Source of the DNA: Lepidodermella squamata | Lineage: Eukaryota; Animalia; Gastrotricha | Direction of reading: 5' to 3' | Assembly: GCA_047495785.1 (NCBI GenBank) | Contig: JBLDXI010000032.1 | Location: forward strand, 2,976,001 to 3,040,000 | DNA length: 64,000 nucleotides | Shown: positions 23,036 through 39,148 of the stretch, in pieces | Position numbering within the stretch: the first letter of the stretch is position 1 | How the letters are laid out: the number at the start of each line of letters is the position of its first letter | Translations under genes and position numbers: made by a program | Notes under the pieces: generated by a model | Told to the model about the DNA's origin: nothing | The model's input: the letters and a program-made list of their open reading frames with translations, nothing else | The model's database searches: none

Positions 23036-24883
23036 CTCGGTCTTGAGTTTCGAACTCTTTTTATACGCTATCAGGTGAGATGTCCGCGATCGTAAACAAG
23101 ACGACGATGATGTTTATCCTGATAAAACGTCGTCCACATATTGAATATTGAATAGCTGCCAGTTTATCCGAACCCCCGCGTTTTCCCGCGAATGCGTCAG
23201 CTAAACATTTAGAAAACTGCAGTAAATTTGATTTATGACTGGCTGCGATACTCATCGTGTGATTAATTAAGCGCATTAGTAAGAACTAATCTGACAGCAG
23301 ACACACGAGAAGTCACGTGTTTTCGCGCGCCGCATCTCCGCAGATTTCTTTAACGGGAAGGCTATAAGCCTGTTTTCATTTCCGTAAAAGCATTTGTTGT
23401 GATATTATCGGATAGAAATCAAATTAAACATGTGTTTTTTGCTACCCATGGCGACGCTTCAATGATTATATCGCTCGTGCGGAACACTTCACTCAGACGA
23501 TTAAATTAGTAAATAAAAAAATAATTGCCGCTTGTTGTTGTTGCGGTGTCCGGTGTTGTTTCAATCGCATCAGAGGTATTTACATTTTAAGCGGGAAATG
23601 TCTCAATTGATTATCCTGTATTCAAGTTTAAATGCTTCGACCTCGATTTTTTCTCGCAACTCCAGGCACGGATATTACGTTTCTTCTCAATGTTGTAACA
23701 GCGCGTGATTTTTGTGGGTCATGTGCGATTTGAAGCTGCATCGAAAGATGGCGTTTTCTTTAGAAAATTGATAATTTCAAGGTAGCAGCCGTAATATTAT
23801 TGTCGACCGCGAAATAGGGCGAAAGGTCTTTATTTCGCTCAACTTGTACTTCTGACGAAGCCTGAAGCACGTTCTTCATCGCACCGAGTTGAGCAATTTG
23901 AGGGTAAAGTTGGGTAAAAACATCGATTTGTTCGCCTCGTGACTGGAAATCAACGCAGGAATAAGTACGGCTGCGACGGATAACCTGAAAATTTACAGTT
24001 AGAATTGTCGCCGAAATTGCCGAAAATTCAATGACCTATTTGCGGCTGATCCTGTGCCCAATGGGTGCATTGGGCCTTAGGCCCCATATCTATATCCTTA
24101 TCAGATAGCCCGCCTCGAGTTTCAACTCGCCATTTTCGGCGATCGTTTTTATAATGTTCACCGAGAAGAGGCGCGGAAAGCTGCAGAAATTCGCATTTTT
24201 CAATGCAAAATTTTTCAAAAAATGGGTGACCTTCGCGCATCACCCTGGTCGTATAATAGGTGACCTGATTACCTCTTCTACCAAGGACACAAAAAATGTG
24301 TAGTTCTGCAGCCATCGTTTTAGGGGATAGGTAAGGCAGTTCCATCAAAACATTCGGAGGTCTGCGGTTCAACTCGACCTGCTGCATGGAAATTTCATGA
24401 CTTTATTCGGATGATTCCTGTAAGAAATCGCAAGCTGCGAATGATTCGTCAGCAACTAAAAGTGGGGAATCTGCGATTCGCGATGTCTTTAGCTTTAGCA
24501 ACGATGAATTGAAACCGCCGGCGAATTGAAGTAATAAAATCATTACGAATATAAAGAAAACCGTCTCATCAGGCTGATTTGCGCGCATTTGCGCGCACTT
24601 ATACCTTTGTGCGGAAACTGTTTTCATTTACATTTTTCTCGCAAGAAATCCACATCCATTAGCTAAGAATGAATCGAAGACGAATCCCATGTTGATAACT
24701 GTGAGAAAGATCGTTTCACATTTAGGCGCCACGAGTCATTCGATGAATGGCTGGTACTTTCCGACCAGCAGCAGACGGTTTAGCCAATATGATTTGATGG
24801 CTGTGCTGGTTGGAGGAGGCTCTGATGGTTCGGCCTTGTCGCGTTTGAAGACGCACGCTTCAACTTGTAACGAGTTTATACTA

Positions 24884-25084
24884 TCCCAGTCCGGCACGAG
24901 CACTTTTGGCTGATTCGAACAACTCCGAACAATTCGATTTGACCCCTTTGTTCGCCTGTTTTTCAGCATTTTCCAGCCGAACAACTCCGAACAAATCCTT
25001 AAGTGCTCAAAAAGAGGCGAACGGGTCAATTCGAATTGTTCGGAGTTGTTCGAATCAGCCAAAAGTGCTCGTGCCGGACTGGGA
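24884..25084. mobile_element. MITE with ~60-bp TIRs, TA TSD
   Basis: TA|TCCCAGTCCGGCACGAGCACTTTTGGCTGATTCGAACAACTCCG ... CGGAGTTGTTCGAATCAGCCAAAAGTGCTCGTGCCGGACTGGGA|TA. Confidence 0.85.
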
Positions 25085-25514
25085 TACGATGATTTAGAAT
25101 TGTGTTCGCCCTTTTCGGGCATGTTCGCCCACTTCCGTAGCTCACCTTGAAATGCAAAGATATGTAGAATGCTATGTAGAAGACTTCAATGCCCGAAGAC
25201 CTAGGACACGGGAAAATCCATCACCAGCTACTTGAGCCTACGAGCTATACCCGAAATTCTGGGAAGAATGAAAGAACGCGCCCTCTGGGTTGAAGTAGAT
25301 TATTCTAAATAAGACGCATAGTCCTAAGTAAGATGAATTCTTGCGAGCCATTCTGAGCATCCTTCATCATTCGCATACGATTTTGAAAATTTATTATTTT
25401 ACAGCAAAACATGATAGAAATATCAACAAACAAAAAAAATAATAATTTTCTCAAATGTAACCGAGGTAGGGGAGAGATGAATAACAGTACAATTGCTAAA
25501 AAACCACCGGGTAT

Positions 25515-25953
25515 TCATTCAGTGAACAAATCTTCGTTGATGAATTGATGAGCAGCAATTCGCGCCCAGAGGTAGAACGGCAAAGGACTACGATCCGTGC
25601 AAATGTCCCGCGGCAAGTACTGCGAGCAGACCTTCAATCGTCGCTTTTTCTCCATTTTGTACAGATGCCGGAATATTACATAGGTCTTACTCGGTCCGAG
25701 GGCTTTGATTAGATGCAAAATATTCTCTGAAACAAAATATAAATAATAAAGCCTAGCCCTAATTATTTCGCAACGTGATATACTTACTTTTCTTAAAAAG
25801 CATCTCCAACACGTTAATTTTGCGCTCGAAGACCGGGTTGAATTTTCGCGCCTTGTTGAATAGCGACGGCGAAGCCTTGCGAGCATCGTTAAGCCAAGCG
25901 AGACTCGATGTCACGAGTGCGATCATCATGTAATACATGTAACATCTAAGCAT
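25515..25953 (-). CDS. Small secreted protein B (same family), 2 exons
   Basis: Signal MMIALVTSSLA; C-terminus KKRRLKVCSQYLPRDICTDRSPLPFYLWARIAAHQF. Confidence 0.8.
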
Positions 25954-26578
25954 GCTTCTCGGCTCAGAAACTGAATGAGTATAGCAACGCGGCTCGTGAT
26001 CAGGCCTTTTAAGCCCTTGAAAATGCGGCTAAAAACTCATATTAAAATTAACCGCATTTAAATTTACGATTATTTATTTTTATAACTTGTTTTTAACCTG
26101 TGTGGGTGCTATGAGAAAAGCGTTAATATTAACAAAAAAATTGGGCAATAATTGGGCGATTAAGGCATCAAGTGCCAGACAAGTAATTTATTTGTCAAAT
26201 AGTTTCGGATTTTTTTGATACGCATGAGGCCTTGAGTATTCTGCCCAATTTACCTAAAATTGAAAACAAAAACACTTTATTTATGCTGTTCGCGTTTCCC
26301 GCTCAGGTGACGTAGTTTTTTTTACCCTAACGATGGACTTCAAGTGCAAACGTTTTTATAGCTAGAACATGGGTTGTTTTTTTCATCGGCACGTGGAAAC
26401 ATTTTGTTCCGGTCGATTGCCGGCAGACATCACGCAGACATTTAAAACCGTGTCAAAGCTTTCAAAAGATTTTCTCACCTTTCAAACAAAATAGTTCATC
26501 AACATGCCGCGATCATATTTATTTCAATATAGAACTAAAATAATCCTACAATTTCTTGATGTCCTGATGAGTCACCGA

Positions 26579-26986
26579 TTAGCTTTGGTTTGGATAAATG
26601 AACTGCTGAGCGGCAACTCTAGCCCAGATGTAGAAAGGTTCCGGGTTCAGATTGGTGCAGAATTGTGACGGCAGGACCTTGGTGCAATCCAAGATTTTTC
26701 GTCTAGTATCGTACCTAATGGCTTGTTTTATAACTTTGTAAGTCTTCTCATGGCCGAGCTGCTGAAGTAACAAAGCCAACCTTCCTGTAATAAAGAGAAG
26801 AATAATTTAAAGATAAGTTGACCTTGAAATAACTGAACCTTTTTTGACGAGAACTTTAACTAAAGATGAGTTCGGCGGAGAAATTACGGCAATAGGCGCG
26901 GCTACAGCATTGTCGAGCGAGTTCACTGAAGAAGCAGCGATGATGAGCAGGCAGATTATTCCGAAAAATCGGTAGGTTGACATCAT
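26579..26986 (-). CDS. Small secreted protein C (same family), 2 exons
   Basis: Signal MMSTYRFFGIICLLIIAASSVNS; C-terminus TRRKILDCTKVLPSQFCTNLNPEPFYIWARVAAQQF. Confidence 0.8.
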
Positions 26987-27503
26987 GTCTTCAATGAAAG
27001 TGAACCGGTTTTCAAGGAGGTAAAATGTCAGATTATATAGTATGATGCCCTGTCCTCGCGCACGAGACGAAACGAGCGAAAAATCGCCCTTCTGGATCGC
27101 TGATTTCTCGTGCGGCTATTATTGCTTTATGATAGTCAGCGACCAGTTAAGTTGTACACTTCGAAATCGAATTAATCAATTTTGTACAATTTAGGTAAAT
27201 TCACGTCGGGGTTAAAGCTCTGCAAAAGCTAGAAATAGTCGTTCATTTATGTCTTTTGTTCCACTAGCCGCTAATCTGTCTGGTCACACGTATATAAATC
27301 CGGGCGAAATTTGTCGATTTATTCAAGGGCGGGATTTGTTTTCAGGTTTATTTCACCCACTCATCCTGGTGAAGATGCGTTGAACCCGTTTATGGAACCT
27401 CACTCGCACCGAGCGTATCTCTAGCTGAGTACAAAAGCTGTATATAATATCAAGGGGGAGGGATGGCTTTATGGTCATTACCTCATGACTTAGCTCACAC
27501 CTC

Positions 27504-28677
27504 ATGTTAAAAGGCTATTTTTACTTGAGTTTAGTTGTGCTATCTATCCATTCGAAAGCTCAGGTAACCATTGCGAATAATTTCATGAAATTAACGTAAT
27601 TTCGATTTGATGACCGAAGAACAACTCAACTTTCGTATGTTCAAATGGGCGAAAAGTCGATATGACTAGCCGGTGTGATGCTGTGGATGATTGCTTCGAT
27701 TTCAGTGACGAACTAAACTGCACCTGTAATAACGACGATCATTTTACGTGTGAAAATTCGCAGTGCATACTAAAAAAGTGATATTTTAATAAATCCTCCT
27801 TAAAATTATTTATTTTGATCAATTTTAGATATCGCTGTGATCACGAGCGGGACTGTTTTGACGGCTCGGACGAGTGGAATTGTAACCGATTTTACTGCTC
27901 ACGTCCGCAATTTTTCGCCTGTTCGAGTGGGCGATGTCTATGGGCCGAAAGCCGGTGCAACGGACTCGTGGATTGTCCAGATGCCAGCGACGAACTAGGC
28001 TGCGGCAGTTAATGCCCGATCACTCTAAAAATCAGCGCTTATTTTACAATATTTTTTGTTTAATTTTCCAGGTTGCACGGATGGCGCGTTTTTATGCAAT
28101 AACAGGCGGTGTGTGGCAGCCGACTCGAGATGCAATTTTGAGGATAATTGCGGCGACAAGTCCGATGAGGCTAACTGTGATAATGGGCAATACGTTTGCC
28201 CGCCTTACCGATTTCGCTGCGGTGATGGTCATTGTCTAACGAGTTCATCTAGGTGTAATGGAATCTTGGAGTGCAGAAACGGAGAGGACGAGGCCGATTG
28301 TCTCGACCCTACAGATCCGATTTTCCCGAATGCGAAATGCCCAACAGATCGGCCGTTTCATTGCCAAAATTCAACGAAATGCATAGAGATATCGTAAATA
28401 TTCCCAAGTCGGAAAAAATTTTTTTTTTAATTAAATAATTTTAAAAAGGCAATTTTGTGATGGACTGAAAGATTGTGATGGGGGATTTGATGAAGAAGGC
28501 TGCGGAACTTGTCAAGGTTCGGAATTTCAGTGCCGAAAATCTCTGAAATGTCTGCCAAGAATGTATCGCTGCGACGGGGATAATGTAATATTTTCTTTAT
28601 ACATCCAAATTATTTTCATTTTTTATTCATTTTAGGATTGCGGGCCTGAAGATTTTTCCGACGAGCTTCAATGCTGA
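27504..28677 (+). CDS. Secreted protein of 7 LDL-receptor class A repeats, no TM segment
   Basis: Signal MLKGYFYLSLVVLSIHSKA; repeats ending DCFDFSDE, DCFDGSDE, DCPDASDE, NCGDKSDE, ECRNGEDE, DCDGGFDE, DCGPEDFSDE; stop right after the last Cys. Confidence 0.85.
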
Positions 28678-29057: not shown

Positions 29058-30377
29058 ATGAGGAATCGAATTCCACTCTATCAAATTTTACTTTTTTGGT
29101 GAGTCCGCTATTTTTTATGCTGATCAATTAATTAAAAAAATCAAATTAATTCCGCCAGTATTGCTCTTAGTTCGAAAGCTGAGGTAAGATCAAATTTACT
29201 CTAGATGCATTTTTTTTTTAATTTTTAATTTAATTTTTTGAGGACACCTGCAGTGCCGATCGGGGTTCGGAAAGTTCGGCTCAATTGAAGCCGAAACAGT
29301 TTCGTGATTACTTTTTCAAACCTAAGGAGGTTCCAAGGCTTTCGGCCAAAGACAAGCTGACCGATCAGCTCATCTCTTCACAGGTGAGAAAAGACCGCCA
29401 AGTGGCAAAATTTATTCCAATTCTTAAATTTTTTAGAAACCAGTTGTCATCACTGACACTAAAATAGTGGCAAGCGCCCATAATTGGACCTTGGAATATT
29501 TGCTCCAGAACCTCGGAGCTGGAAAATTCATGCTATGCACATCTGACGATGGCCGTTTCATGTACTACGACGATAAAAAGCTTGACGTAGTCGAGGGCTT
29601 CCAACCTCCTCATCGGCGTGAATTTATCACCTTCAAAGATTTCTACGACCGATTCAAAAATCGAAATTCAAGCAAGCAATACATGTATCTACAGGAAGCG
29701 TTGAACGACGGGGTATCGAAGCAACTGCTAGCCGATGTCCTCAAATTTAACTGGGACTGGGCGAATGGGCAGCAGAAACGCAATAAATGGCATGAATTGA
29801 CCTCGAACTTGCTGTTAATTGGCCAAGAAGGCAGCATCACCCCGGCTCATTACGACGAACAGGAAAATTTTCTGGCCCAAATTAGCGGGACGAAACGAGT
29901 GCTGTTTTTCGCCCCTTCTGAATTTGTCAACCTTTACCCGTACCCTGTCTACCACCCTTGCGATCGCCAGTCTCAAGTTAACCTGGAAAAACCTGATTTT
30001 AAGCGATTTCCACGAGCTTCGAAAGTCGAAGCTGTTGAGGCTATTCTAAACCCTGGTGACGTGGTTTACATCCCGCCGTATTGGTGGCATCATGTCGAAT
30101 CTGGCTTCGATGAGCCGACCATAAGTCTGACATTCTGGTACAAAAGTCCGCCATTTGAAAGTATCAACTACCCGTTGCAGTTCGATCAGAAAATCACGAT
30201 AATGCGAAACATTGAAAAAATGATCAACGAAGCGCTGAGAAATGACGCGAAAGAGGTCAATTTCAATTATATTTACGAATAAGACAATTTTTATTATTCA
30301 ATTTTTTGTTGAAGGTAACGAGTTTGTTCCGCGACTTGACTCTTGGCCGTTACGCACAATTTCCGATCGAAAATTGA
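29058..30377 (+). CDS. HIF1AN: FIH-1 (HIF asparaginyl hydroxylase, JmjC) paralog 1 with signal-peptide-like leader
   Basis: LLLIGQEGSITPAHYDEQENF, LYPYPVYHPCDRQSQV, YIPPYWWHHVES, MRNIEKM match FIH; exons 29058-29098, 29159-29183, 29243-29383, 29437-30255, ~30315-30377. Confidence 0.9.
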
Positions 30378-30413
30378 ATTTATTACGACAGGTGCTGAAA
30401 AGTAGACAGCTAA

Positions 30414-31287
30414 TAGTGCGTTCACAAACTACTTCGGAGACCGACCGCTTCGGAGAGCGAAGTAGAAACTTCGGAGAGAAATAGCAAAACTTCGGCGGCC
30501 TTATCAGTGACATTTTCTACGCGCGCGCGCAGCGTGACGACCGAAGTTTCTATTGTTCGCGGCCGAAGTTTGGCCGCTCGCTCACACACCACGCCCGGGT
30601 ATGGCTCTTACTCAGGGTCAATGCAATTTTTTTCCATTTTACCTTAATTCTCCGAATTGTTTGCATAATGAGACGCGCCTTCTGATGAGGATAAAAAGAA
30701 GCTAAATTTCAGCGCTCAGTTCACCTGATTCGCTATAAAAAATATTTGCTAAAATATTCTCGCGCATTCTCATCAAAGCCACTTTTTCCATACGAGCCGC
30801 GCAATTTCTAGATTTAAAAATTCGCCATTCGAAACCGGAAATTTTTGCAATATTAATTTCTCAGTATCTAATGCTTATCACTATTGCTATGTAATTTTTT
30901 AATGGCTAATGAAACGGATCGCATTTTCAATGAAAATATCACCGGAAAGACAAATTTGAGGCGCCTGGTACAGTGTGGTCAAGTGGCTGTGTGCGCGCGC
31001 GCGTGTTTGCGTGCGTGCGTAATAACTTCGGACGCGCTCAAACTTCGGTTCGGAGGCACTTCGGAGAGCAGTTTTGGGGCTCTCCGAACCGAAGTTTGTG
31101 CGCGTCCTTTGTTCGGTGCGCGCGCACCGCCTATTGTTCAAACTTCGGCGGCGCTGGCCGAAGTGCGCGCGTTTGTGAACGAAAATCTAAACTTCGGGCA
31201 GCGATTACGCAACTTCGGAGGCCTGTTACGAAACTTCGGTGGCCGAAAACTTCGGACGCCTCTCCGAAGTAGTTTGTGAACGCACTA
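30414..31287. mobile_element. Non-autonomous TIR DNA transposon downstream of FIH paralog 1
   Basis: 27-bp perfect TIR TAGTGCGTTCACAAACTACTTCGGAGA; many subterminal (A)ACTTCGG repeats; no ORF. Confidence 0.85.
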
Positions 31288-31900
31288 TGATTTGTAAACT
31301 GATGAATCTTTTGTCTTTCTGACTGTTAGTCATGGGTTTGAAGCACTTAAAAACTAAAAAAAAAAACAATAAAAAAATGAATAGATTGGAAAATCAAAAT
31401 AGAGACTTTTGATTAACCGTGTTAAAATCTTGATTCACTGCCAGGTATAAAAGGTATTCAAAATATTTAAACTTTCTTTATTGAAACGATTAAAGATATT
31501 GGCGAACGGCTGGCAACGAGCTGTGGCTTTCAAACAATGAGCGCAAGTGAAACGCTCAACAATAGTGACGAGACAAAAGTCCTTACAACGCGAAACCTGA
31601 AACATGTTCGTCTTCCGTTATCTTTCTCAGTAGTATCCAAGATAAAATTTCGAAATATTTACACATTTTTGATTACACCAACAACTTCAAATGGGCTGAG
31701 CTCCTCGCCAAAAAGGAACAGGAAGGAACTGCAGGCAACGGCATTGATCGCCGAAGAAGATGGATTGAACCCTTTTACTCAATAGGCCCATCTCATCTGA
31801 AGCTTCTAATTGATTTTCTTGGGCAAAAAAAAAATCCATTTCGAGTAGCTTGATGTGGAATATCTGTTTATTGGAACTACAGTTTATTTCGTAATTTTAC

Positions 31901-32058
31901 GGGTGTGGCGCGAACGCCGGTACCCAAGTGAAATATTTCGCACCCGACTCCACCGATGAGGCAGAGCGCAGGGGTCAGCGGACCGCAGTGCAATGGCCCG
32001 CCTCGCCCTGGGGCGACCGACTTGCTGAGCTCGGTTCATCCCAGTGCCAGGTAAGTTT
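31901..32058 (-). ncRNA. U1 snRNA (variant)
   Basis: AAACTTACCTGG 5' end, four-stem fold, SL2 loop ATTGCAC, SL4 GCG-TTCG-CGC; altered SL1 loop and Sm site. Confidence 0.9.
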
Positions 32059-32172
32059 AGTGGCCAAAGGTCTAAGCGATCGGCCCCACTCAGCAATTAA
32101 ACGATAAGCTGACATTAAAGTAATTTGGTTATGCCTTTTTTCTTCATAAAATCTGAAAAAAATTGACATTTC

Positions 32173-32244
32173 TAGCAGAGCGTAGTTTCGATCTACAGAC
32201 CTCTGGGTTATGGGCCCAGCGCGCTTCCACTGCGCCACTCTGCT
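32173..32244 (-). tRNA. tRNA-iMet (CAT), initiator
   Basis: AGCAGAGTGGCGCAGTGGAAGCGCGCTGGGCCCATAACCCAGAGGTCTGTAGATCGAAACTACGCTCTGCTA: A1-U72, GGG/CCC anticodon stem, ATCGAAA T-loop. Confidence 0.97.
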
Positions 32245-32315
32245 TGTCTGATGAGTTTTCAATCCCTTTGATCATTGAATTTGAAACGTCCAATAATTTA
32301 TATGACAAAAAATGC

Positions 32316-32397
32316 TGGCAGCGGTGGGGTTCGAACCCACGCCTCCGAAGAGACTAGAGCCTAAATCTAGCGCCTTAGACCACTCGGCCACGCTACC
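32316..32397 (-). tRNA. tRNA-Leu (TAG)
   Basis: GGTAGCGTGGCCGAGTGGTCTAAGGCGCTAGATTTAGGCTCTAGTCTCTTCGGAGGCGTGGGTTCGAACCCCACCGCTGCCA, long variable arm. Confidence 0.97.
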
Positions 32398-32920
32398 TTG
32401 ATAATCCAAACTTGTAGCATCCGCCTTATAGTCTCAACTTATTCCAGTTTCGATAGTTCGTAGCTAAATGAAGTAAAGCAGCTCATACGAAGGTAGCCTT
32501 TTTCGGCTCAACAGCTGAATGTCATAACCCCTAACCTTTTTTACCGGCTAGTCCCAAGTCAACGTCGATAAAGCTGATTTCACTAAATTCAAATAAAATT
32601 TGTCAAAGCAAACCTTAAAAGCACATAGTTAAGGAATAAATTAATTATTTTATTCACTAAATTTTGGGAGAATCAACTGATACGCCAACCTCTTCAGCAA
32701 ACAATGATACTGTGGTTGACAATACGAGCTGCCAAACAACGTGGCAAAACAACAGTGGTTGAGGTTATTCAAGCTACTAAACAAAAGACCTGGAAACTCA
32801 TTGATAAACTCGCTCTCTCGGAACACGGTCATCTTTTAACATTCTCTTTTATTTATTTAGAACAATTAAGCTTCTAATATATAAAATAATTCGTAAAATT
32901 TACGTTTTTTTTCTAATGAA

Positions 32921-34227
32921 ATGGCGCTGAGGAAACAAGGTGCCATCTATTCTATCATCTTCACTTTGGCGTAGGTTTGGTCTAAAAAAATTTGTGCGGA
33001 TTTAATCAATTATTTATAAAAATTTCTCAGGTTTGCAGCAGGAAGCCAATCAGAGGTAAACCATCGAACTATTTTCAAGTTCTTAGAATAAAAACCTTTT
33101 AAGGAGGATTCGTGTCGCGCTGATGGGAAAGACGATTGCTCGCAGAAGAAGCCGTTTCGAGACTACTATTTCAAGCCCAAACAATTACCGAGGCTGTCGA
33201 TCAAGGACAAACTAACCGACCAACTTATCTCAAAAGAGGTATTCTCCTAGTCGCTTCCTTAAAGACATTATTCAGCATTAAAATTAAGGAGCCTTTAGTA
33301 ATTACGGATACTGGAATTGTTGCTAGTGCTCTTAATTGGACGCTGGAATATTTACTGGAGAATTCAGCAGATGAAAAATTCACGCTACGAATCTCCGATA
33401 ATCATCGATTTTTGTACTTCAACGAGAAAAAGGTGAAGAACGTCAAGGGGTTCAAACGACCCCATCGCGTAACATCGGTCACATTTCGCGAATTTTACGA
33501 CATGTTCAGCGAACGGCAATCAAACCCGAAGTGGTTGTACCTGCAGGAAGAACAGGCGTACAAGAAAGCGTCAAAGCTGAAAGATGACATCAAAAACTTC
33601 AACTGGGATTGGGCGAATGGTCAGAAGAAACGAAATAAGTGGAAGGAACTGGCAACGAATTTGCTGCTAATCGGCGAGGAGGGCGGTATGACGCCTGCTC
33701 ATTACGACGAACACAACAACTTTTTGGCTCAGATCGCTGGGACAAAGCGAGTGCTGCTTTTCCCGCCATCTGATTTTCCGAAGTTATACCCATACCCGTT
33801 GTACCATCCATGCGATCGCCAGTCTCAGGTCGATTTCGAAAATCCGGATTTCACGAGATTCCCGCAAGCCCCTGACGTCGAAGCTTTCGAGGCTATAATC
33901 AATCCAGGTGATGTTATCTACATCCCGCCCCGATGGTGGCACCACATCGAGTCCGGGTTGGATGCCCCGACTATCAGCTTGACGTTTTGGTACGAAAGCA
34001 TTTTCCAGGATCAACAGCCGACCTTCCCGCCGTCGGCTGTCGAGCGGATCATAATGATGCGAAATGTCGAGAAAATGATTGGCGAAGCGATGGATTGGGA
34101 TGAAAAAGAGGTAATTTCTTTTGAATTTGAAACGTATTTCCGCTAAATGCAGATTTCCTTGTAGATATCTGACTTTTTCCGGTTTATAACGCTTGGTCGG
34201 TTCGCGAAGTTCCCGATAACTAAGTGA
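32921..34227 (+). CDS. HIF1AN: FIH-1 paralog 2 with signal-peptide-like leader
   Basis: TPAHYDEHNNF, HPCDRQSQVDF, WWHHIES; exons 32921-32970, 33031-33055, 33104-33238, 33289-34110, ~34165-34227. Confidence 0.9.
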
Positions 34228-35263: not shown

Positions 35264-35905
35264 ATGGTTTACAAAGCAGTTGCAGAAATAGTAACTTTGA
35301 TCATTGCGATCATCGCTAATTCCTTCGCGATGGAAGGCGTGATAAAAAGAGAAATTCGTCAGCGAAACTAAAGGCGCTTTCTCGCCAGTCTTCTCGCCGC
35401 GGGAATCTACATTTGCGGCATGAGAGCTTTATCACTGCTGAGAGCTAGTTCCTTCTCGTTCTTCGAGGTCGATTCGCAACTGAACAAATGCGCACATAGG
35501 CTGGAGCACAGCTTAGAAATGGCTGGATATCTGTCTTTTCGGCTCAACCTTTGCGGCATGTTTTTCGACCACTTTCTAGGCATTGTAAGCTTTACATTCA
35601 CTTGATTTCAAATGGGTTGGTTAATCTCTTTGTTAACAGGTGCATCCCCATCAATATAAGCTATTTATGGATTCGTTTCTCATGAAAAGCGCTTTCGTAT
35701 TGATTGCTATTGGAACAATGTTTATTGGTAAAATATCTCCTTGCTCTGGTGCTCTAGGATTAGCTTGTATTCCTCATTTATAGCCGTGCTTGATTATTCA
35801 ATATTTGCCGTGGTAATTCCCCGATTAAAACTGGATTTACAACAGCCTGGTAAACATAAATCTATTGCGATTGAATTCACAAACTGTGGAGAGTCGATTT
35901 TGGAA
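35264..35905 (+). pseudogene. Orphan GPCR pseudogene (5' half only)
   Basis: Paralog of 37722/43286 with TAC>TAA at 35369-35371; similarity ends early in ECL2. Confidence 0.85.
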
Positions 35906-37721
35906 TTTGGAATGTTTGGAATGTTGGGACTTAGGCGATGATTTGGCCCTCACGTCATCTTCAATCGCAAACCAGCAACTATTGCCAACTAAGTGAAGCT
36001 GCTTCATGGCAATAATGATTGGCGATAGCCAGGTTGAAGCGTGTCATCAAGTCCTGAAAGTTACTTTTTTATGATAATTGCCGCTGAATTGAGTAATGAG
36101 TGCACATTTTCTTTGCATGGCTGTTGCCGCCCTTGACACAGAAAAACTGTAAGCTCGTGGAGCTAGTCTCAGGATAGAGGGATCTCTCCTGACTAAACCT
36201 TTAACCTGTTGTGCACCAGATTTCGTGATCTGCATCGAGTAGCTATAAAAGTTTACAATTATGGAGATAATTATTTATCGAAAGCGGATTTCTATAGGAG
36301 CTAGACCTATAGCCGAAACACTGAACAGTGGACAGGTTGAACAATATATTGGGCAACGGTAGCTGACACTGGCTTTGTGAGCATATTTGAACATTTGGAA
36401 TCTTTAATGTTTGGAAGTCAAGTCGGCCGGACTCATTTTTTATGAAAAATGAGGCGCTAGCGTCGGGAGAGCTATCACGAGGGACGTTTCGATCGCCTCG
36501 CCGCCGTGTATGTATTGCAGTGTCGTAGTATTTGAAGGTGGGCGAATACGGGAACGTTGGCTGTCGCTTAGAGCAGACATGTGCGCGATTTAACCCGCTC
36601 TTCTCATTGTGTCGGATAGCGGAGAGACCCCACGCGCCTTAGGCAGGCGTTGTCGAAGTTACTTATTCAGCATCAGCCGTTTCAAAAAGTGTGCGAGGAA
36701 GTTCTAGAAATAGAAACAACGATCCTTCTCATTTTGTCTCTGAGCTCACAGTATAGGGCAAAATGCTTTATCGTTAATGAAATTACGCTATGTGGCGAGC
36801 GAGTGCCCTTAATTACGCTTGATTAGTTTGATAGGATTTGAAAAACATTAATAAGTTTGTTTGCGCAATTGCGAAAATCAAGCCTTTAATCCTGTGCCAT
36901 TTCCATGTGGTTTCATCATTTACTTATACCTATTTATTCGGGAAGAGAATGAGGAATGAGGAAGCGCCTATTTTGCGCTCCCCAATCAGGACAAAAAGGT
37001 TAGAATTCCGCGATTTTTTCATTTAAATTCGGAATTTCGCGCTATATCAGATACCGTATAGTTTCCAATATGGTACGAGAAACTCATCGTGTTATTTCAC
37101 GAAGGGAGCGAGTGCACGCCAAAAAATCTTTATTCATGTTTATTATACATAGGGCAGGTTTGCTTCAACCAACATTATTTCGTAAGCTTCGACGCATTGC
37201 AGTCGAATATTTTGAAATTGAATGCGGACGTCGAAATGTCCTGTCTCGGATGCCACGGTTTGAACAAGTTCATATTTATAAGCCACTACAATTCTATCCA
37301 CTTGACTCTGGTACTAAATTCTAAAAATGTGACGCAGTCAGTTAATTAAGAAATTTCGATCACTAACTATTAGACTAGGTGGGTCGAATTGGTTAAAACT
37401 TCAACCAGGATTAACCACTTTATTAGAAAATCATGACCAAAAGAGCAAATAGGCTATCGATGAAATTGCTTAACGAACTTATGACAAAACTATTTTAATA
37501 ATTGATGTTTACCAGGGCATGTTAACCTAGCACAAGAAATTAGACATAAGGATAACGAACGCGAGTTCATAATCTTGTCACTCCCTGGCGCGACGCCATG
37601 CGTCATTTTCAATCAATCTTGTCCAAAAAATAGCCCGCCTACAGTAGCAAGCTAGCATCTAAAGAATAACGCTTGCTTTGAACTTTACTACTGGTTTCTT
37701 GAAATTTTATAGCGAGCAATC

Positions 37722-39148
37722 ATGATTTACAAAGCACTTGCAGAAGTTTTAACCCTGATTATAGCTATCATCGCCAACTCCTTCGCGATGGAGGGCGTAG
37801 TCAATGGCGAAATTCGTCAGCGAAACTACAGGCGCTTCCTCGCCAGTCTTCTCGCCGCGGGAATCTACATTTGCGGCATGAGGGCTTTATCTCTGCTGAG
37901 AGCTACTTCATTCTCGTTCTTCGAGGTCGATTCACAACTCAACAAATGCGCACATAGGCTGGAACACAGCTTGGAAATGGCTGGCTATCTGTCTTTTCTG
38001 CTCAATCTTTGCGGCATGTTTTTCGACCACTTTCTAGGCATTGTAAGCTTTAAATTCCTTTAATTTCAAGTGGATTGATTAATCTCTTTGTAACCAGGTG
38101 CATCCCCATCAATATAAGCTACTTATGGACACCTTCCTTATACGAAAGGCTCCCGTTTTGATAGCCATTTTGGTAATTTTACTTGGTAAGTTTATTGTGG
38201 TTTTGAATAAAAAAAAGCTAATCATATCTTTTCCCAGCTGTGCTTGATTTCGCGGTATTTGCCGTGGTAATCCCTCAATCTACACTAGGATTGCGTAAGC
38301 CTGGCACCGCCAAATCGATAGCGATTGAATTTACGAACTGTGACGAGTCAGCATTGGAAATGGGCGGAGCTCAACTTCAACAGCCCAGTTCTTTTTCGAA
38401 AAGTTTCAACCACGGAGTTTTCCTTGTTGATCTAAACAACGCCTCATCTTTCCACGGAATTATGAACACCCTAGTGAGAGACATGCCCGAGTCTTGCCAG
38501 CTGAACACTTCAACAGATGCTCTTCTCGACGTTTACCTGTCTGTTTTAATGGACGCCGAGGATCACAATATTTTACTGGCAAGCACTTGGAAATGGTGCT
38601 CCAGTTATTCCCATAGTCTGTACGAATACTCGTTCGAATTTTTGGTCATGATTTTCACGTTACTAGTCATGACGTTTATCATCATGTGCCACTGCAGCTT
38701 TCGCCGAGTCATCAACCGGTCAAATGGGCGGACCAAACAAAAAGTAGCTAAATTGAACACAACAACAGCAATTTTGTTATCGGCTTTCACTGTTTGCTGG
38801 GTCCCATTCGTTGTCCACGAAATTACTATGGCCTTACTAGTTCAGCAGAACGCCGACTCGAGTCAATTCAGTTCTCACGCTATGACGCTTCAAAATATGC
38901 TTTACACCTTGTTCTTGTCGATTCCGATCGTCATTCCGGTGATTTATGTGGCGAGAATCGGAGCAGTATCGCGGTATCTGTCGGGAAAATATTCATTTCT
39001 GTGTTGTCGGGACATAAGTGGCGAATCATCAACGCCGCCTGTGTCATCTTCAATTGCAATCCCCCTCTCGGCATCCACACATAGATTAAGCGTCGCTCTC
39101 AATCAGCATCTTGGGCGTATAGAAGGCCGACTGGTTCAAGATTTTTAG
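37722..39148 (+). CDS. Rhodopsin-class orphan GPCR (DHF family) 1
   Basis: 7 TM; TM3 KC...DHFLGI|VHP, TM6 CWVPF, TM7 PIVIPVIY; 3 exons. Confidence 0.85.

What the first reader, a model, noticed from the sequence alone, without database searches (positions are those of the whole stretch)
29058..34227. Two FIH/HIF1AN oxygen-sensor paralogs that both appear rerouted to the secretory pathway
Seen: upstream of the conserved FIH start (FRDY.FKPK..PRLS.KD) each copy has two small exons with identical architecture (exon 1 ending phase 2, then a 25-nt micro-exon). They encode MRNRIPLYQILLFCIALSSKA|EDTC and MALRKQGAIYSIIFTLAFAAGSQS|EEDSC: basic n-region, hydrophobic core, small-residue cleavage site, and a shared extra Cys. 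The Fe ligands (HxD...H) and DRQ are kept, the Asn of human VNFWY is Thr in both, and there is no KDEL. Known: FIH is a cytosolic Asn hydroxylase of HIF-alpha and ankyrin repeats; luminal Asn/Asp hydroxylation is normally done by AspH. Inference: neofunctionalised secreted or luminal 2OG-oxygenases acting on extracellular proteins (neighbouring secreted genes are candidates).
Basis: partly seen in the sequence, partly recalled or inferred. Interest (0 to 1): 0.82.

Follow-up and report, generated by a model that had tools for sequence, protein, structure and literature searches.

The report
FIH oxygenase pair with secretion signals
Two neighbouring, intact copies of the normally cytosolic oxygen-dependent asparagine hydroxylase FIH each carry two tiny upstream exons that very probably encode a secretion signal, so this small animal seems to send FIH into the secretory pathway, although no RNA or localisation data could be obtained here.

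Summary
Both genes are five-exon, GT-AG, intact members of the canonical FIH (HIF1AN) group, with every iron, 2-oxoglutarate and substrate-positioning residue kept.

Exon 3 has no start codon. With introns of the size seen in these genes (40-70 nt), only one ATG-started exon chain joins it in frame in each gene. Shuffled upstream DNA gives such a chain 1-2 times in 1000.

The copies are old (synonymous sites saturated), so the shared leader layout has been kept by selection.

Independent support comes from two N-glycosylation sequons conserved in cytosolic FIH, one beside the active site. Both are lost in both copies, and in none of 119 other FIH proteins.

New context: a separate, undescribed FIH-like subfamily with signal peptides exists in corals and tubeworms. 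The gain here is independent of it (AU test p = 0.005).

This scan flagged similar genes on other DNA of this genome (s1-394007, s1-394103), plus many secreted ankyrin-repeat genes, which are FIH's classic substrates. Those notes are untested here.

The Asn-to-Thr change is common in FIH, and nothing links the neighbouring genes to FIH.

The parts
29058..29098 (+). Gene 1 exon 1: ATG, basic n-region (MRNR) and most of the hydrophobic core; ends in phase 2
   Evidence: The donor TG|GTGAGT scores like the homology-supported donors. It is part of the only in-frame chain.
29159..29183 (+). Gene 1 exon 2: 25-nt micro-exon holding the end of the core and the small-residue cleavage region (..SSKA|E)
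   Evidence: Flanked by introns of 60 and 59 nt.
29243..29383 (+). Gene 1 exon 3: acidic linker with Cys25, then the conserved FIH N-terminal motif (FRDY..PRLS); no ATG
   Evidence: The phase-0 intron in front of it is shared with the relative in L002.
29437..30255 (+). Gene 1 exon 4: JmjC/cupin catalytic core (273 aa)
   Evidence: Cupin_8 E = 1e-43. Human FIH E = 1e-93. Active-site residues kept.
30315..30377 (+). Gene 1 exon 5: end of the C-terminal dimerisation helix and the stop codon; no KDEL-type signal
   Evidence: Its ..LGRY.. matches ..IKGRY at the C-terminus of canonical FIH (P0028).
32921..32970 (+). Gene 2 exon 1: ATG, basic n-region (MALRKQ) and hydrophobic core; ends in phase 2
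33031..33055 (+). Gene 2 exon 2: 25-nt micro-exon holding the end of the core and the cleavage region (..GSQS|E)
   Evidence: Flanked by introns of 60 and 48 nt.
33104..33238 (+). Gene 2 exon 3: acidic linker with Cys29 and Cys37, then the FIH N-terminal motif; no ATG
33289..34110 (+). Gene 2 exon 4: JmjC/cupin catalytic core (274 aa)
   Evidence: Cupin_8 E = 6e-45. Active-site residues kept.
34165..34227 (+). Gene 2 exon 5: C-terminal helix and stop codon; no KDEL-type signal

Best explanation
These are two old tandem duplicates of the animal's canonical FIH (HIF1AN) gene.

In each, two mini-exons (41 or 50 nt, then 25 nt) add a cleavable N-terminal signal peptide of about 21-24 residues. It is followed by a short acidic, cysteine-bearing linker in front of an otherwise complete and catalytically intact FIH.

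The enzymes are therefore most likely translocated into the endoplasmic reticulum. There they would use Fe(II), 2-oxoglutarate, O2 and ascorbate to hydroxylate asparagine (possibly also His or Asp) side chains of proteins passing through the secretory pathway. With no retention signal, they may then be secreted themselves or be held back by a partner.

The most plausible clients are ankyrin-repeat domains, FIH's general substrate class. Other notes of this scan report many ankyrin-repeat genes with signal peptides in this same genome.

Shown here: gene structure, FIH identity, intact active site, statistical support and long-term conservation of the leader, and loss of conserved sequons.

Inferred: use of exons 1-2 in mRNA, cleavage of the leader, luminal location, enzyme activity and substrates.
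For: 1. FIH identity. PDB FIH E = 1e-93. Cupin_8. The genes sit inside the canonical FIH group, next to leaderless sisters P0078 and P0103.

2. Active site. All 12 Fe, 2OG and substrate-positioning residues checked are kept; only Asn294 is changed, to Thr.

3. An upstream start is obligatory, because exon 3 has no ATG and has stops in front of it.

4. Only one in-frame ATG chain exists with 40-70 nt introns, in both genes, and both chains are signal-peptide-like. Shuffles give 0.1-0.2% and natural AG sites give 0.6%.

5. The layout is identical in the two copies (phase-2 exon 1, 25-nt exon 2), although pS = 0.76 (saturated) and pN = 0.22. Unselected sequence would have decayed over that time.

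6. The hydrophobic cores are 13-15 residues long. They are preceded by 2 basic residues and followed by small residues at -3 and -1 and then acidic residues. This fits a cleavable signal peptide, not a membrane span or a mitochondrial presequence.

7. Sequons N151-D-T (97/119) and N194-V-T (105/119; two residues before the 2OG ligand T196) are both lost in both copies, and 0 of 119 other FIH proteins lack both. Both copies share a new N-W-T sequon that none of the 119 others has. The conserved free Cys216 and Cys226 are gone.

8. Across FIH-like proteins, apart from the likely mis-annotated P0013, 0 of 16 with a signal-like N-terminus keep the N194 sequon, against 115 of 176 without one.

9. 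The fold can exist in this setting. An independent FIH-like subfamily with signal peptides and intact active sites occurs in a coral and a tubeworm. In corals, contigs of 1.7-2.6 kb carry the whole reading frame of a 7-kb gene, so they must be spliced transcripts.

10. The closest relative (L002, 63% identity) shares the phase-0 intron and has at least 12 further coding codons upstream.
Against: - The only possibly-RNA run holds 31% of the words of the stretch, which proves nothing about junctions.
- No SignalP or DeepLoc run. The signal-peptide test used here is a home-made heuristic.
- With introns up to 150 nt, many other GT/AG chains are possible, and the splice-site matrix cannot rank them.
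- The animal reportedly trans-splices a leader onto its mRNAs (scan notes, untested here). A leader ending in AUG joined to the phase-0 exon 3 would give a cytosolic FIH.
- Each mature protein has 3 Cys, an odd number.
- The relative P0001 keeps the N194 sequon.
- There is no ER retention signal, and 2OG oxygenases are not expected to work outside cells.
- Substrates are unknown, and no ankyrin gene lies in this window.
Confidence: 0.6

Rival explanations
1. Ordinary cytosolic FIH. The mature mRNAs do not use exons 1-2. Exon 3 (or exon 2) is a trans-splice acceptor, or is joined to a different first exon, and the start codon comes from a spliced leader ending in AUG or from another exon.
For: - Scan notes report a 30-nt spliced leader in this genome (s1-421969, s1-407453).
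- Exon 3 starts in phase 0 in both genes and in the relative, so a terminal AUG on the leader would be in frame.
- From my own knowledge: flatworm spliced leaders end in AUG.
- Many alternative GT/AG chains exist if longer introns are allowed.
Against: - It leaves unexplained why both old copies keep an ATG, an open frame, four splice sites, a 25-nt exon and a hydrophobic core.
- It leaves unexplained why both lost the two sequons conserved in cytosolic FIH.
- I do not know the sequence of the leader.
- No single-exon alternative exists within 600 nt.
Confidence: 0.15
2. The leader is an uncleaved signal anchor. The enzymes would then be type II membrane proteins with a luminal catalytic domain, like aspartyl/asparaginyl beta-hydroxylase (AspH).
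For: - The basic residues precede the hydrophobic stretch, which gives an N-in orientation.
- There is no ER retention signal, so a membrane tether would explain retention.
Against: - The hydrophobic stretches are only 13-15 residues, short for a membrane span.
- They are followed by classic small residues at -3 and -1 (S-K-A, S-Q-S) and then by acidic residues.
Confidence: 0.1
3. Dual targeting. Alternative splicing or trans-splicing yields both a secretory and a leaderless cytosolic form, so that regulation of HIF or cytosolic ankyrin proteins is retained.
For: - In gene 2, an in-frame alternative (donor at 32940, acceptor at 33038) removes the hydrophobic core. It had the best score in my weak splice matrix.
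- Both canonical-group copies carry the leader, so a cytosolic FIH would otherwise be missing.
Against: - That intron would be 99 nt, outside the 48-60 nt of all eight introns here.
- Gene 1 has no equivalent that removes the core.
- The loss of the sequons suggests the luminal form is the main one.
- The matrix has little discriminating power.
Confidence: 0.08
4. The leader targets mitochondria or another organelle, not the secretory pathway.
For: The N-termini are basic.
Against: - The uncharged hydrophobic cores are contiguous, not an amphipathic Arg-rich helix.
- Acidic residues follow directly.
- The sequon changes fit a glycosylating compartment.
Confidence: 0.03

Closest known systems
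Human FIH / HIF1AN (PDB 1H2K and others)
   Same: - About 50% identical over the catalytic core and C-terminal helices (E = 1e-93).
- Same Fe triad (H199, D201, H279), same 2OG ligands (Y145, T196, N205, K214) and same substrate-positioning residues (Y102, Q147, R238, Q239, W296).
- Inside the canonical FIH group.
   Different: - An N-terminal signal-peptide-like leader plus a Cys-bearing acidic linker, encoded by two extra mini-exons.
- Both conserved sequons (N151, N194) and Cys216/Cys226 are lost.
- A new shared NWT sequon.
- F207L, which is otherwise almost unique to this lineage.
- None of the 120 best FIH homologues has a credible leader.
FIH-like subfamily with signal peptides. Members: the Orbicella faveolata HIF1AN-like cluster (XP_020631143.1 with 482-aa transcript forms, P0134), Lamellibrachia satsuma KAI0236975.1 and KAI0228368.1 (P0213, P0284), and the unnamed P0158, P0176 and P0220.
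   Same: - A signal peptide, then a short Cys-containing segment, then the FIH N-terminal motif and an intact active site.
- Residue 194 is never Asn.
- No KDEL.
- In the coral, the start of the signal peptide lies on a separate upstream exon that the RefSeq model lacks.
   Different: - It is a separate, more divergent group (96% support).
- An AU test rejects joining it with the window genes (p = 0.005). The leader here is therefore an independent gain within canonical FIH, or an exon transfer.
- I found no paper describing this subfamily.
JMJD8
   Same: A JmjC-only protein with a signal peptide, located in the ER lumen and forming dimers or oligomers. Its authors call it the first JmjC protein found in the ER lumen (PMC5684140).
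   Different: It is a different JmjC family. The window proteins are FIH by sequence and by tree. JMJD8 has no demonstrated Asn-hydroxylase activity (my own knowledge).
Aspartyl/asparaginyl beta-hydroxylase (AspH)
   Same: A 2OG oxygenase that makes beta-hydroxy-Asn or -Asp on secretory proteins in the ER lumen. This is the same chemistry and compartment as proposed here (established knowledge).
   Different: - An unrelated sequence family with a type II membrane anchor and TPR domain.
- Its substrates are EGF-like domains, not ankyrin repeats.

Membership tests
FIH / HIF1AN (canonical) | JmjC double-stranded beta-helix core of the Cupin_8 type, with best similarity to FIH rather than to other JmjC hydroxylases | tested here: met
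   Cupin_8 E = 1e-43 and 6e-45. PDB FIH E = 1e-93, against 1e-23 for JMJD5 and 1e-14 for JMJD7.
FIH / HIF1AN (canonical) | Fe(II) triad His199-x-Asp201...His279 and 2OG ligands Tyr145, Thr196, Asn205, Lys214 (Asn294) | tested here: met
   All are kept in both genes. Asn294 is Thr, as in 30 of 120 orthologues.
FIH / HIF1AN (canonical) | Residues that position the substrate Asn: Tyr102, Gln147, Arg238, Gln239, Trp296 | tested here: met
   All are kept in both genes.
FIH / HIF1AN (canonical) | C-terminal helices for the homodimer | tested here: inconclusive
   The region is present and aligns. Position 340 is Phe, as in 10 of 120 orthologues. Dimer formation was not modelled.
FIH / HIF1AN (canonical) | Placement inside the FIH group in a tree | tested here: met
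   Grouped with P0001 (97-99% support) and leaderless P0078/P0103, within canonical FIH.
FIH / HIF1AN (canonical) | Cytosolic or nuclear protein without a targeting signal | tested here: not met
   Both genes have a predicted signal peptide. None of the 120 best homologues has one. This is a heuristic result only, with no SignalP run and no experiment.
FIH / HIF1AN (canonical) | Asn hydroxylation of the HIF-alpha C-terminal activation domain and of ankyrin repeats | not testable with these tools
   This needs an enzyme assay.
Secretory-pathway 2OG oxygenases (functional class: AspH, P4H, PLOD, JMJD8) | N-terminal signal peptide or signal anchor | tested here: met
   Basic n-region, 13-15 residue uncharged core, small residues at -3 and -1. 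Prediction only.
Secretory-pathway 2OG oxygenases (functional class: AspH, P4H, PLOD, JMJD8) | ER retention by KDEL/HDEL, a membrane anchor or a retained partner | tested here: not met
   The C-termini are ..FPIEN and ..FPITK. A partner cannot be tested here. Note s1-394103 mentions a KTEL-ended neighbour of another FIH paralogue (untested).
Secretory-pathway 2OG oxygenases (functional class: AspH, P4H, PLOD, JMJD8) | A sequence adapted to a glycosylating, oxidising compartment | tested here: met
   Both conserved sequons are lost (0 of 119 others lack both), a new shared NWT sequon is present, and two conserved free Cys are lost. This evidence is indirect.
FIH-like subfamily with signal peptides (coral and tubeworm type) | Placement in that group | tested here: not met
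   The subfamily forms one group with 96% support. An AU test rejects its union with the window genes (p = 0.005).

The most novel reading that the evidence does not exclude
FIH works here inside the secretory pathway as the maturation enzyme of an extracellular ankyrin-repeat repertoire.

It would hydroxylate the conserved Asn of ankyrin repeats while they are still unfolded in the ER and so stabilise them for life outside the cell.

The same solution would have arisen at least twice in animals: in canonical FIH in gastrotrichs, and in a separate signal-peptide FIH-like subfamily in corals and tubeworms.

As a corollary, this animal would have given up FIH control of HIF.
Probability: 0.22. 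Interest if true: 0.88.

Novelty: new variant of a known kind. Interest (0 to 1): 0.68.

Why it matters
FIH is the textbook cytosolic oxygen-dependent asparagine hydroxylase, acting on HIF-alpha and on ankyrin-repeat domains. The physiological purpose of ankyrin hydroxylation is still debated (PMC6488082).

A canonical FIH sent into the secretory pathway would be a new compartment for this chemistry. The only established luminal Asn/Asp hydroxylase is the unrelated AspH, and the only JmjC protein reported in the ER lumen is JMJD8 (PMC5684140).

It would give a natural system in which the HIF-independent, ankyrin-directed role of FIH can be studied on its own. It would also offer a mechanistic partner for the secreted ankyrin-repeat proteins noted elsewhere in this genome.

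The by-product found here widens the question beyond one animal: an undescribed, transcribed FIH-like subfamily with signal peptides in corals and tubeworms, partly mis-annotated in RefSeq.

Tried and rejected
- **The look-up of sequencing runs.** It gave only two holders, neither on record as RNA. X1's 31% share of words could be transcripts of both genes or thin DNA coverage, so I did not use it as evidence.
- **Splice-site matrix.** I trained it on ORF-bounded short introns of the window. The consensus is weak. The homology-supported introns 3 and 4 score no better than introns 1 and 2, and alternative chains score similarly, so it cannot decide.
- **Metagenome scan.** It returned only a distant, long-intron FIH (L003) and a fragment (L004). 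Neither helps with the leader.
- **The closest relative (L001, L002).** The contig ends inside the exon upstream of exon 3, so its N-terminus cannot be seen.
- **Ankyrin motifs in the window.** None were found, so the substrate idea could not be tested here.
- **Neighbours of the coral and tubeworm genes.** No ankyrin genes lie next to them.
- **Asn294 to Thr as a sign of new function.** Rejected, because 25% of orthologues have Thr.
- **JMJD8 orthology.** Rejected on similarity to FIH and on the tree.
- **Descent from the coral-type signal-peptide subfamily.** Rejected by the AU test.
- **Cluster look-ups.** They gave no taxon for the sister sequences P0078 and P0103.

Full report
**What is there**

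The stretch 29058-34227 holds two tandem genes on the + strand.
- Gene 1 exons: 29058-29098, 29159-29183, 29243-29383, 29437-30255, 30315-30377 (362 aa).
- Gene 2 exons: 32921-32970, 33031-33055, 33104-33238, 33289-34110, 34165-34227 (364 aa).

All eight introns are GT-AG and 48-60 nt long. Between the genes lie an element of about 0.9 kb with terminal inverted repeats and two tRNA genes.

The large exon of each gene matches Pfam Cupin_8 (E = 1e-43 and 6e-45). It matches solved human FIH at E = 1e-93, against 1e-23 for the next family, JMJD5. The two proteins are 61% identical to each other. Synonymous differences are saturated (pS 0.76) while pN is 0.22. This is an old duplication with both copies under purifying selection.

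**Which animal**

The window has 40-43% G+C and very short introns. Notes of this scan suggest the gastrotrich Lepidodermella squamata and report a 30-nt spliced leader. The published assembly (122 Mb, 157 contigs, 43% G+C; PMC11660948) fits the scan's figures of 1993 windows on 147 pieces. I did not test the identity directly.

The nearest database relative is an unnamed metagenome protein (P0001, 63% identity). All named FIH proteins are 55% identical or less.

**Checking the observation**

- exon 1 ending in phase 2;
- a 25-nt exon 2;
- the leader peptides;
- the extra Cys after the predicted cleavage site;
- HxD...H and DRQ;
- Thr for human Asn294;
- C-termini without KDEL.

Exon 3 has no ATG and is preceded by in-frame stops, yet it encodes the conserved FIH N-terminal motif. 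An upstream coding exon is therefore obligatory.

I allowed at most two upstream exons and introns of 40-70 nt (these genes' introns are 48-60 nt). Under those limits exactly one ATG-started in-frame chain exists per gene.
- Dinucleotide shuffles of the same 400 nt pass in 2/1000 and 1/1000 cases.
- Natural AG sites of the window pass in 42 of 6645 cases. Several of those look like real signal peptides of other genes, judging by their position.

Caveats: with introns up to 150 nt, 118 and 30 formal GT/AG chains exist. A splice-site matrix trained on this window is too weak to rank them.

**Is the leader selected?**

The two copies diverged long enough ago for synonymous sites to be randomised. 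Both still keep an ATG, an open frame, four splice sites, the same phases, a 25-nt micro-exon and a hydrophobic core. That is hard to explain without function.

The nearest relative (locus L002) has an intron in the same place and phase: phase 0, 19 codons before the FR.Y motif, against 19 and 17 here. It also has at least 12 further open codons upstream, where the contig ends. The N-terminal extension is therefore older than this species.

**What kind of leader**

The hydrophobic stretches are 13 residues (gene 1) and about 15 residues (gene 2). Each is preceded by two basic residues and followed by S-K-A or S-Q-S and then acidic residues. This is the pattern of a cleavable signal peptide. 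It is short for a membrane anchor and unlike a mitochondrial presequence. SignalP was not available.

**Independent evidence from the mature protein**

In an alignment with 120 FIH homologues, all Fe, 2OG and substrate-positioning residues are kept.

Two N-glycosylation sequons are conserved in cytosolic FIH: N151-D-T (97/119) and N194-V-T (105/119). N194 is two residues before the 2OG ligand T196. Both sequons are destroyed in both genes by different replacements, and none of the 119 other proteins lacks both. Both genes share a new N-W-T sequon that none of the others has. The commonly conserved Cys216 and Cys226 are also absent.

A sequon next to the active site is harmless in the cytosol but would be glycosylated in the ER. 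Its loss is what relocation predicts (inference).

F207L is nearly unique to these genes and P0001.

**Relatives with signal peptides**

None of the 120 best FIH homologues has a credible leader.

A profile search of 1.84 billion representatives then uncovered more distant FIH-like proteins with clear signal peptides:
- a coral cluster (Orbicella faveolata HIF1AN-like XP_020631143.1, with 482-aa forms);
- Lamellibrachia satsuma KAI0236975.1 and KAI0228368.1;
- several unnamed ones.

They keep the active site and never have Asn at position 194.

The coral contigs of 1.7-2.6 kb carry the whole 482-aa frame of a gene that spans about 7 kb in the genome, so they are spliced transcripts. The first residues of the coral signal peptide map to a separate exon about 7 kb upstream, which the RefSeq model lacks.

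Over all FIH-like proteins with complete N-termini, 0 of 16 with a signal-like N-terminus keep the N194 sequon, against 115 of 176 without one. The 16 exclude one likely mis-annotated salamander model. These counts are not phylogenetically independent, but several lineages are involved.

In trees this subfamily is one group (96% support), and the window genes lie inside canonical FIH beside leaderless sisters. An AU test rejects uniting the two (p = 0.005; the group was named after a first tree had been seen). A secretion signal has therefore been added to an FIH-type enzyme at least twice.

**Mechanism proposed**

The nascent proteins enter the ER, the leader is cut off, and the active homodimer-type enzyme hydroxylates Asn in secretory cargo. 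It would use Fe(II), 2-oxoglutarate, O2 and ascorbate, as the luminal enzymes P4H, PLOD and AspH do (established knowledge). Without KDEL, the enzymes may follow their clients out of the cell or be held by a partner.

The substrate class best supported by what is known of FIH is the ankyrin repeat (PMC6488082, PMC2649815).

Notes of this scan report many clusters of signal-peptide ankyrin proteins in this genome. One was followed up and supported (s1-365902). The notes also report three further FIH-like genes with signal peptides (s1-394007) and a dead paralogue beside a KTEL-ended protein (s1-394103). I could not read those windows, so they are leads and not evidence. This window has no ankyrin gene.

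The upstream neighbour is an LDL-receptor class A repeat protein.

**Rivals**

- Main rival: the leader exons are not used. Exon 3 would be trans-spliced to a leader that supplies AUG, as some flatworm leaders could (my own knowledge), giving ordinary cytosolic FIH. This does not explain the conserved leader or the sequon loss, but it cannot be excluded without RNA.
- Signal anchor: an uncleaved anchor with a luminal catalytic domain.
- Dual targeting: gene 2 has an in-frame alternative that skips the hydrophobic core.
- Mitochondrial targeting. The last three are less likely than the main rival.

**Literature**

Full-text searches found no paper on a secreted or luminal FIH. The broad survey of non-vertebrate FIH does not mention signal peptides or paralogues. 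JMJD8 is described as the first JmjC protein in the ER lumen.

**Limits**

I sent nothing from those places to any search tool afterwards. No RNA, localisation or activity evidence exists in this report.

**Verdict**

- It is a new variant of a known enzyme family.
- Confidence that the products enter the secretory pathway is about 0.6.

Noticed in passing
P0134 cluster, P0213/P0284, P0158, P0176/P0283, P0220; loci L005 and L006: A distinct FIH-like subfamily with signal peptides and intact active sites exists in corals (Orbicella faveolata) and tubeworms (Lamellibrachia satsuma). The RefSeq coral model XP_020631143.1 starts downstream of the signal peptide. The first 14 residues of the signal peptide map about 7 kb upstream in L006 (2758-2799). 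I found no paper describing this subfamily.
   Followed up: partly
window 30401-31300: An element of about 0.9 kb with 40-nt terminal inverted repeats (88% complementary) and many CTTCGG-type short repeats lies between the two FIH genes. It looks like a non-autonomous DNA transposon.
   Followed up: partly
window 32173-32244 (-) and 32316-32397 (-): tRNA-Met (CAT) and tRNA-Leu (TAG) genes lie between the two FIH genes. The tRNA-Leu place is what made read laying refuse the stretch, and it was not sent to any search afterwards.
   Followed up: no
window about 27560-28400 (+): The upstream neighbour is a gene for a protein with several LDL-receptor class A modules. A signal-peptide-like first exon was picked up by the chain scan near 27560-27620.
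   Followed up: partly
window 24400-26990 (-): Several small ORFs on the minus strand start with signal-peptide-like leaders and have no Pfam match. They may be lineage-specific secreted proteins.
   Followed up: no
window 35741-39148 and about 43900 (+): Repeated genes with similar N-termini (MD.FL..KAP...) include one with a rhodopsin-type 7TM match (38240-39148). This is probably a tandem GPCR family.
   Followed up: no
L001 1587-5203 and L002 1873-3135: In the closest relative's metagenome contigs, the FIH gene is followed by a TRPM-like channel gene (LSDAT and TRPM2 domains). That neighbour is not present next to the FIH genes in this window.
   Followed up: no
PMC6918071 (Riftia pachyptila proteome): FIH proteins were detected almost only in the symbiont-bearing trophosome of Riftia, and its symbiont has ankyrin proteins with signal peptides. 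The related tubeworm Lamellibrachia has FIH-like paralogues with signal peptides. Whether the Riftia proteins are of that type was not checked.
   Followed up: no
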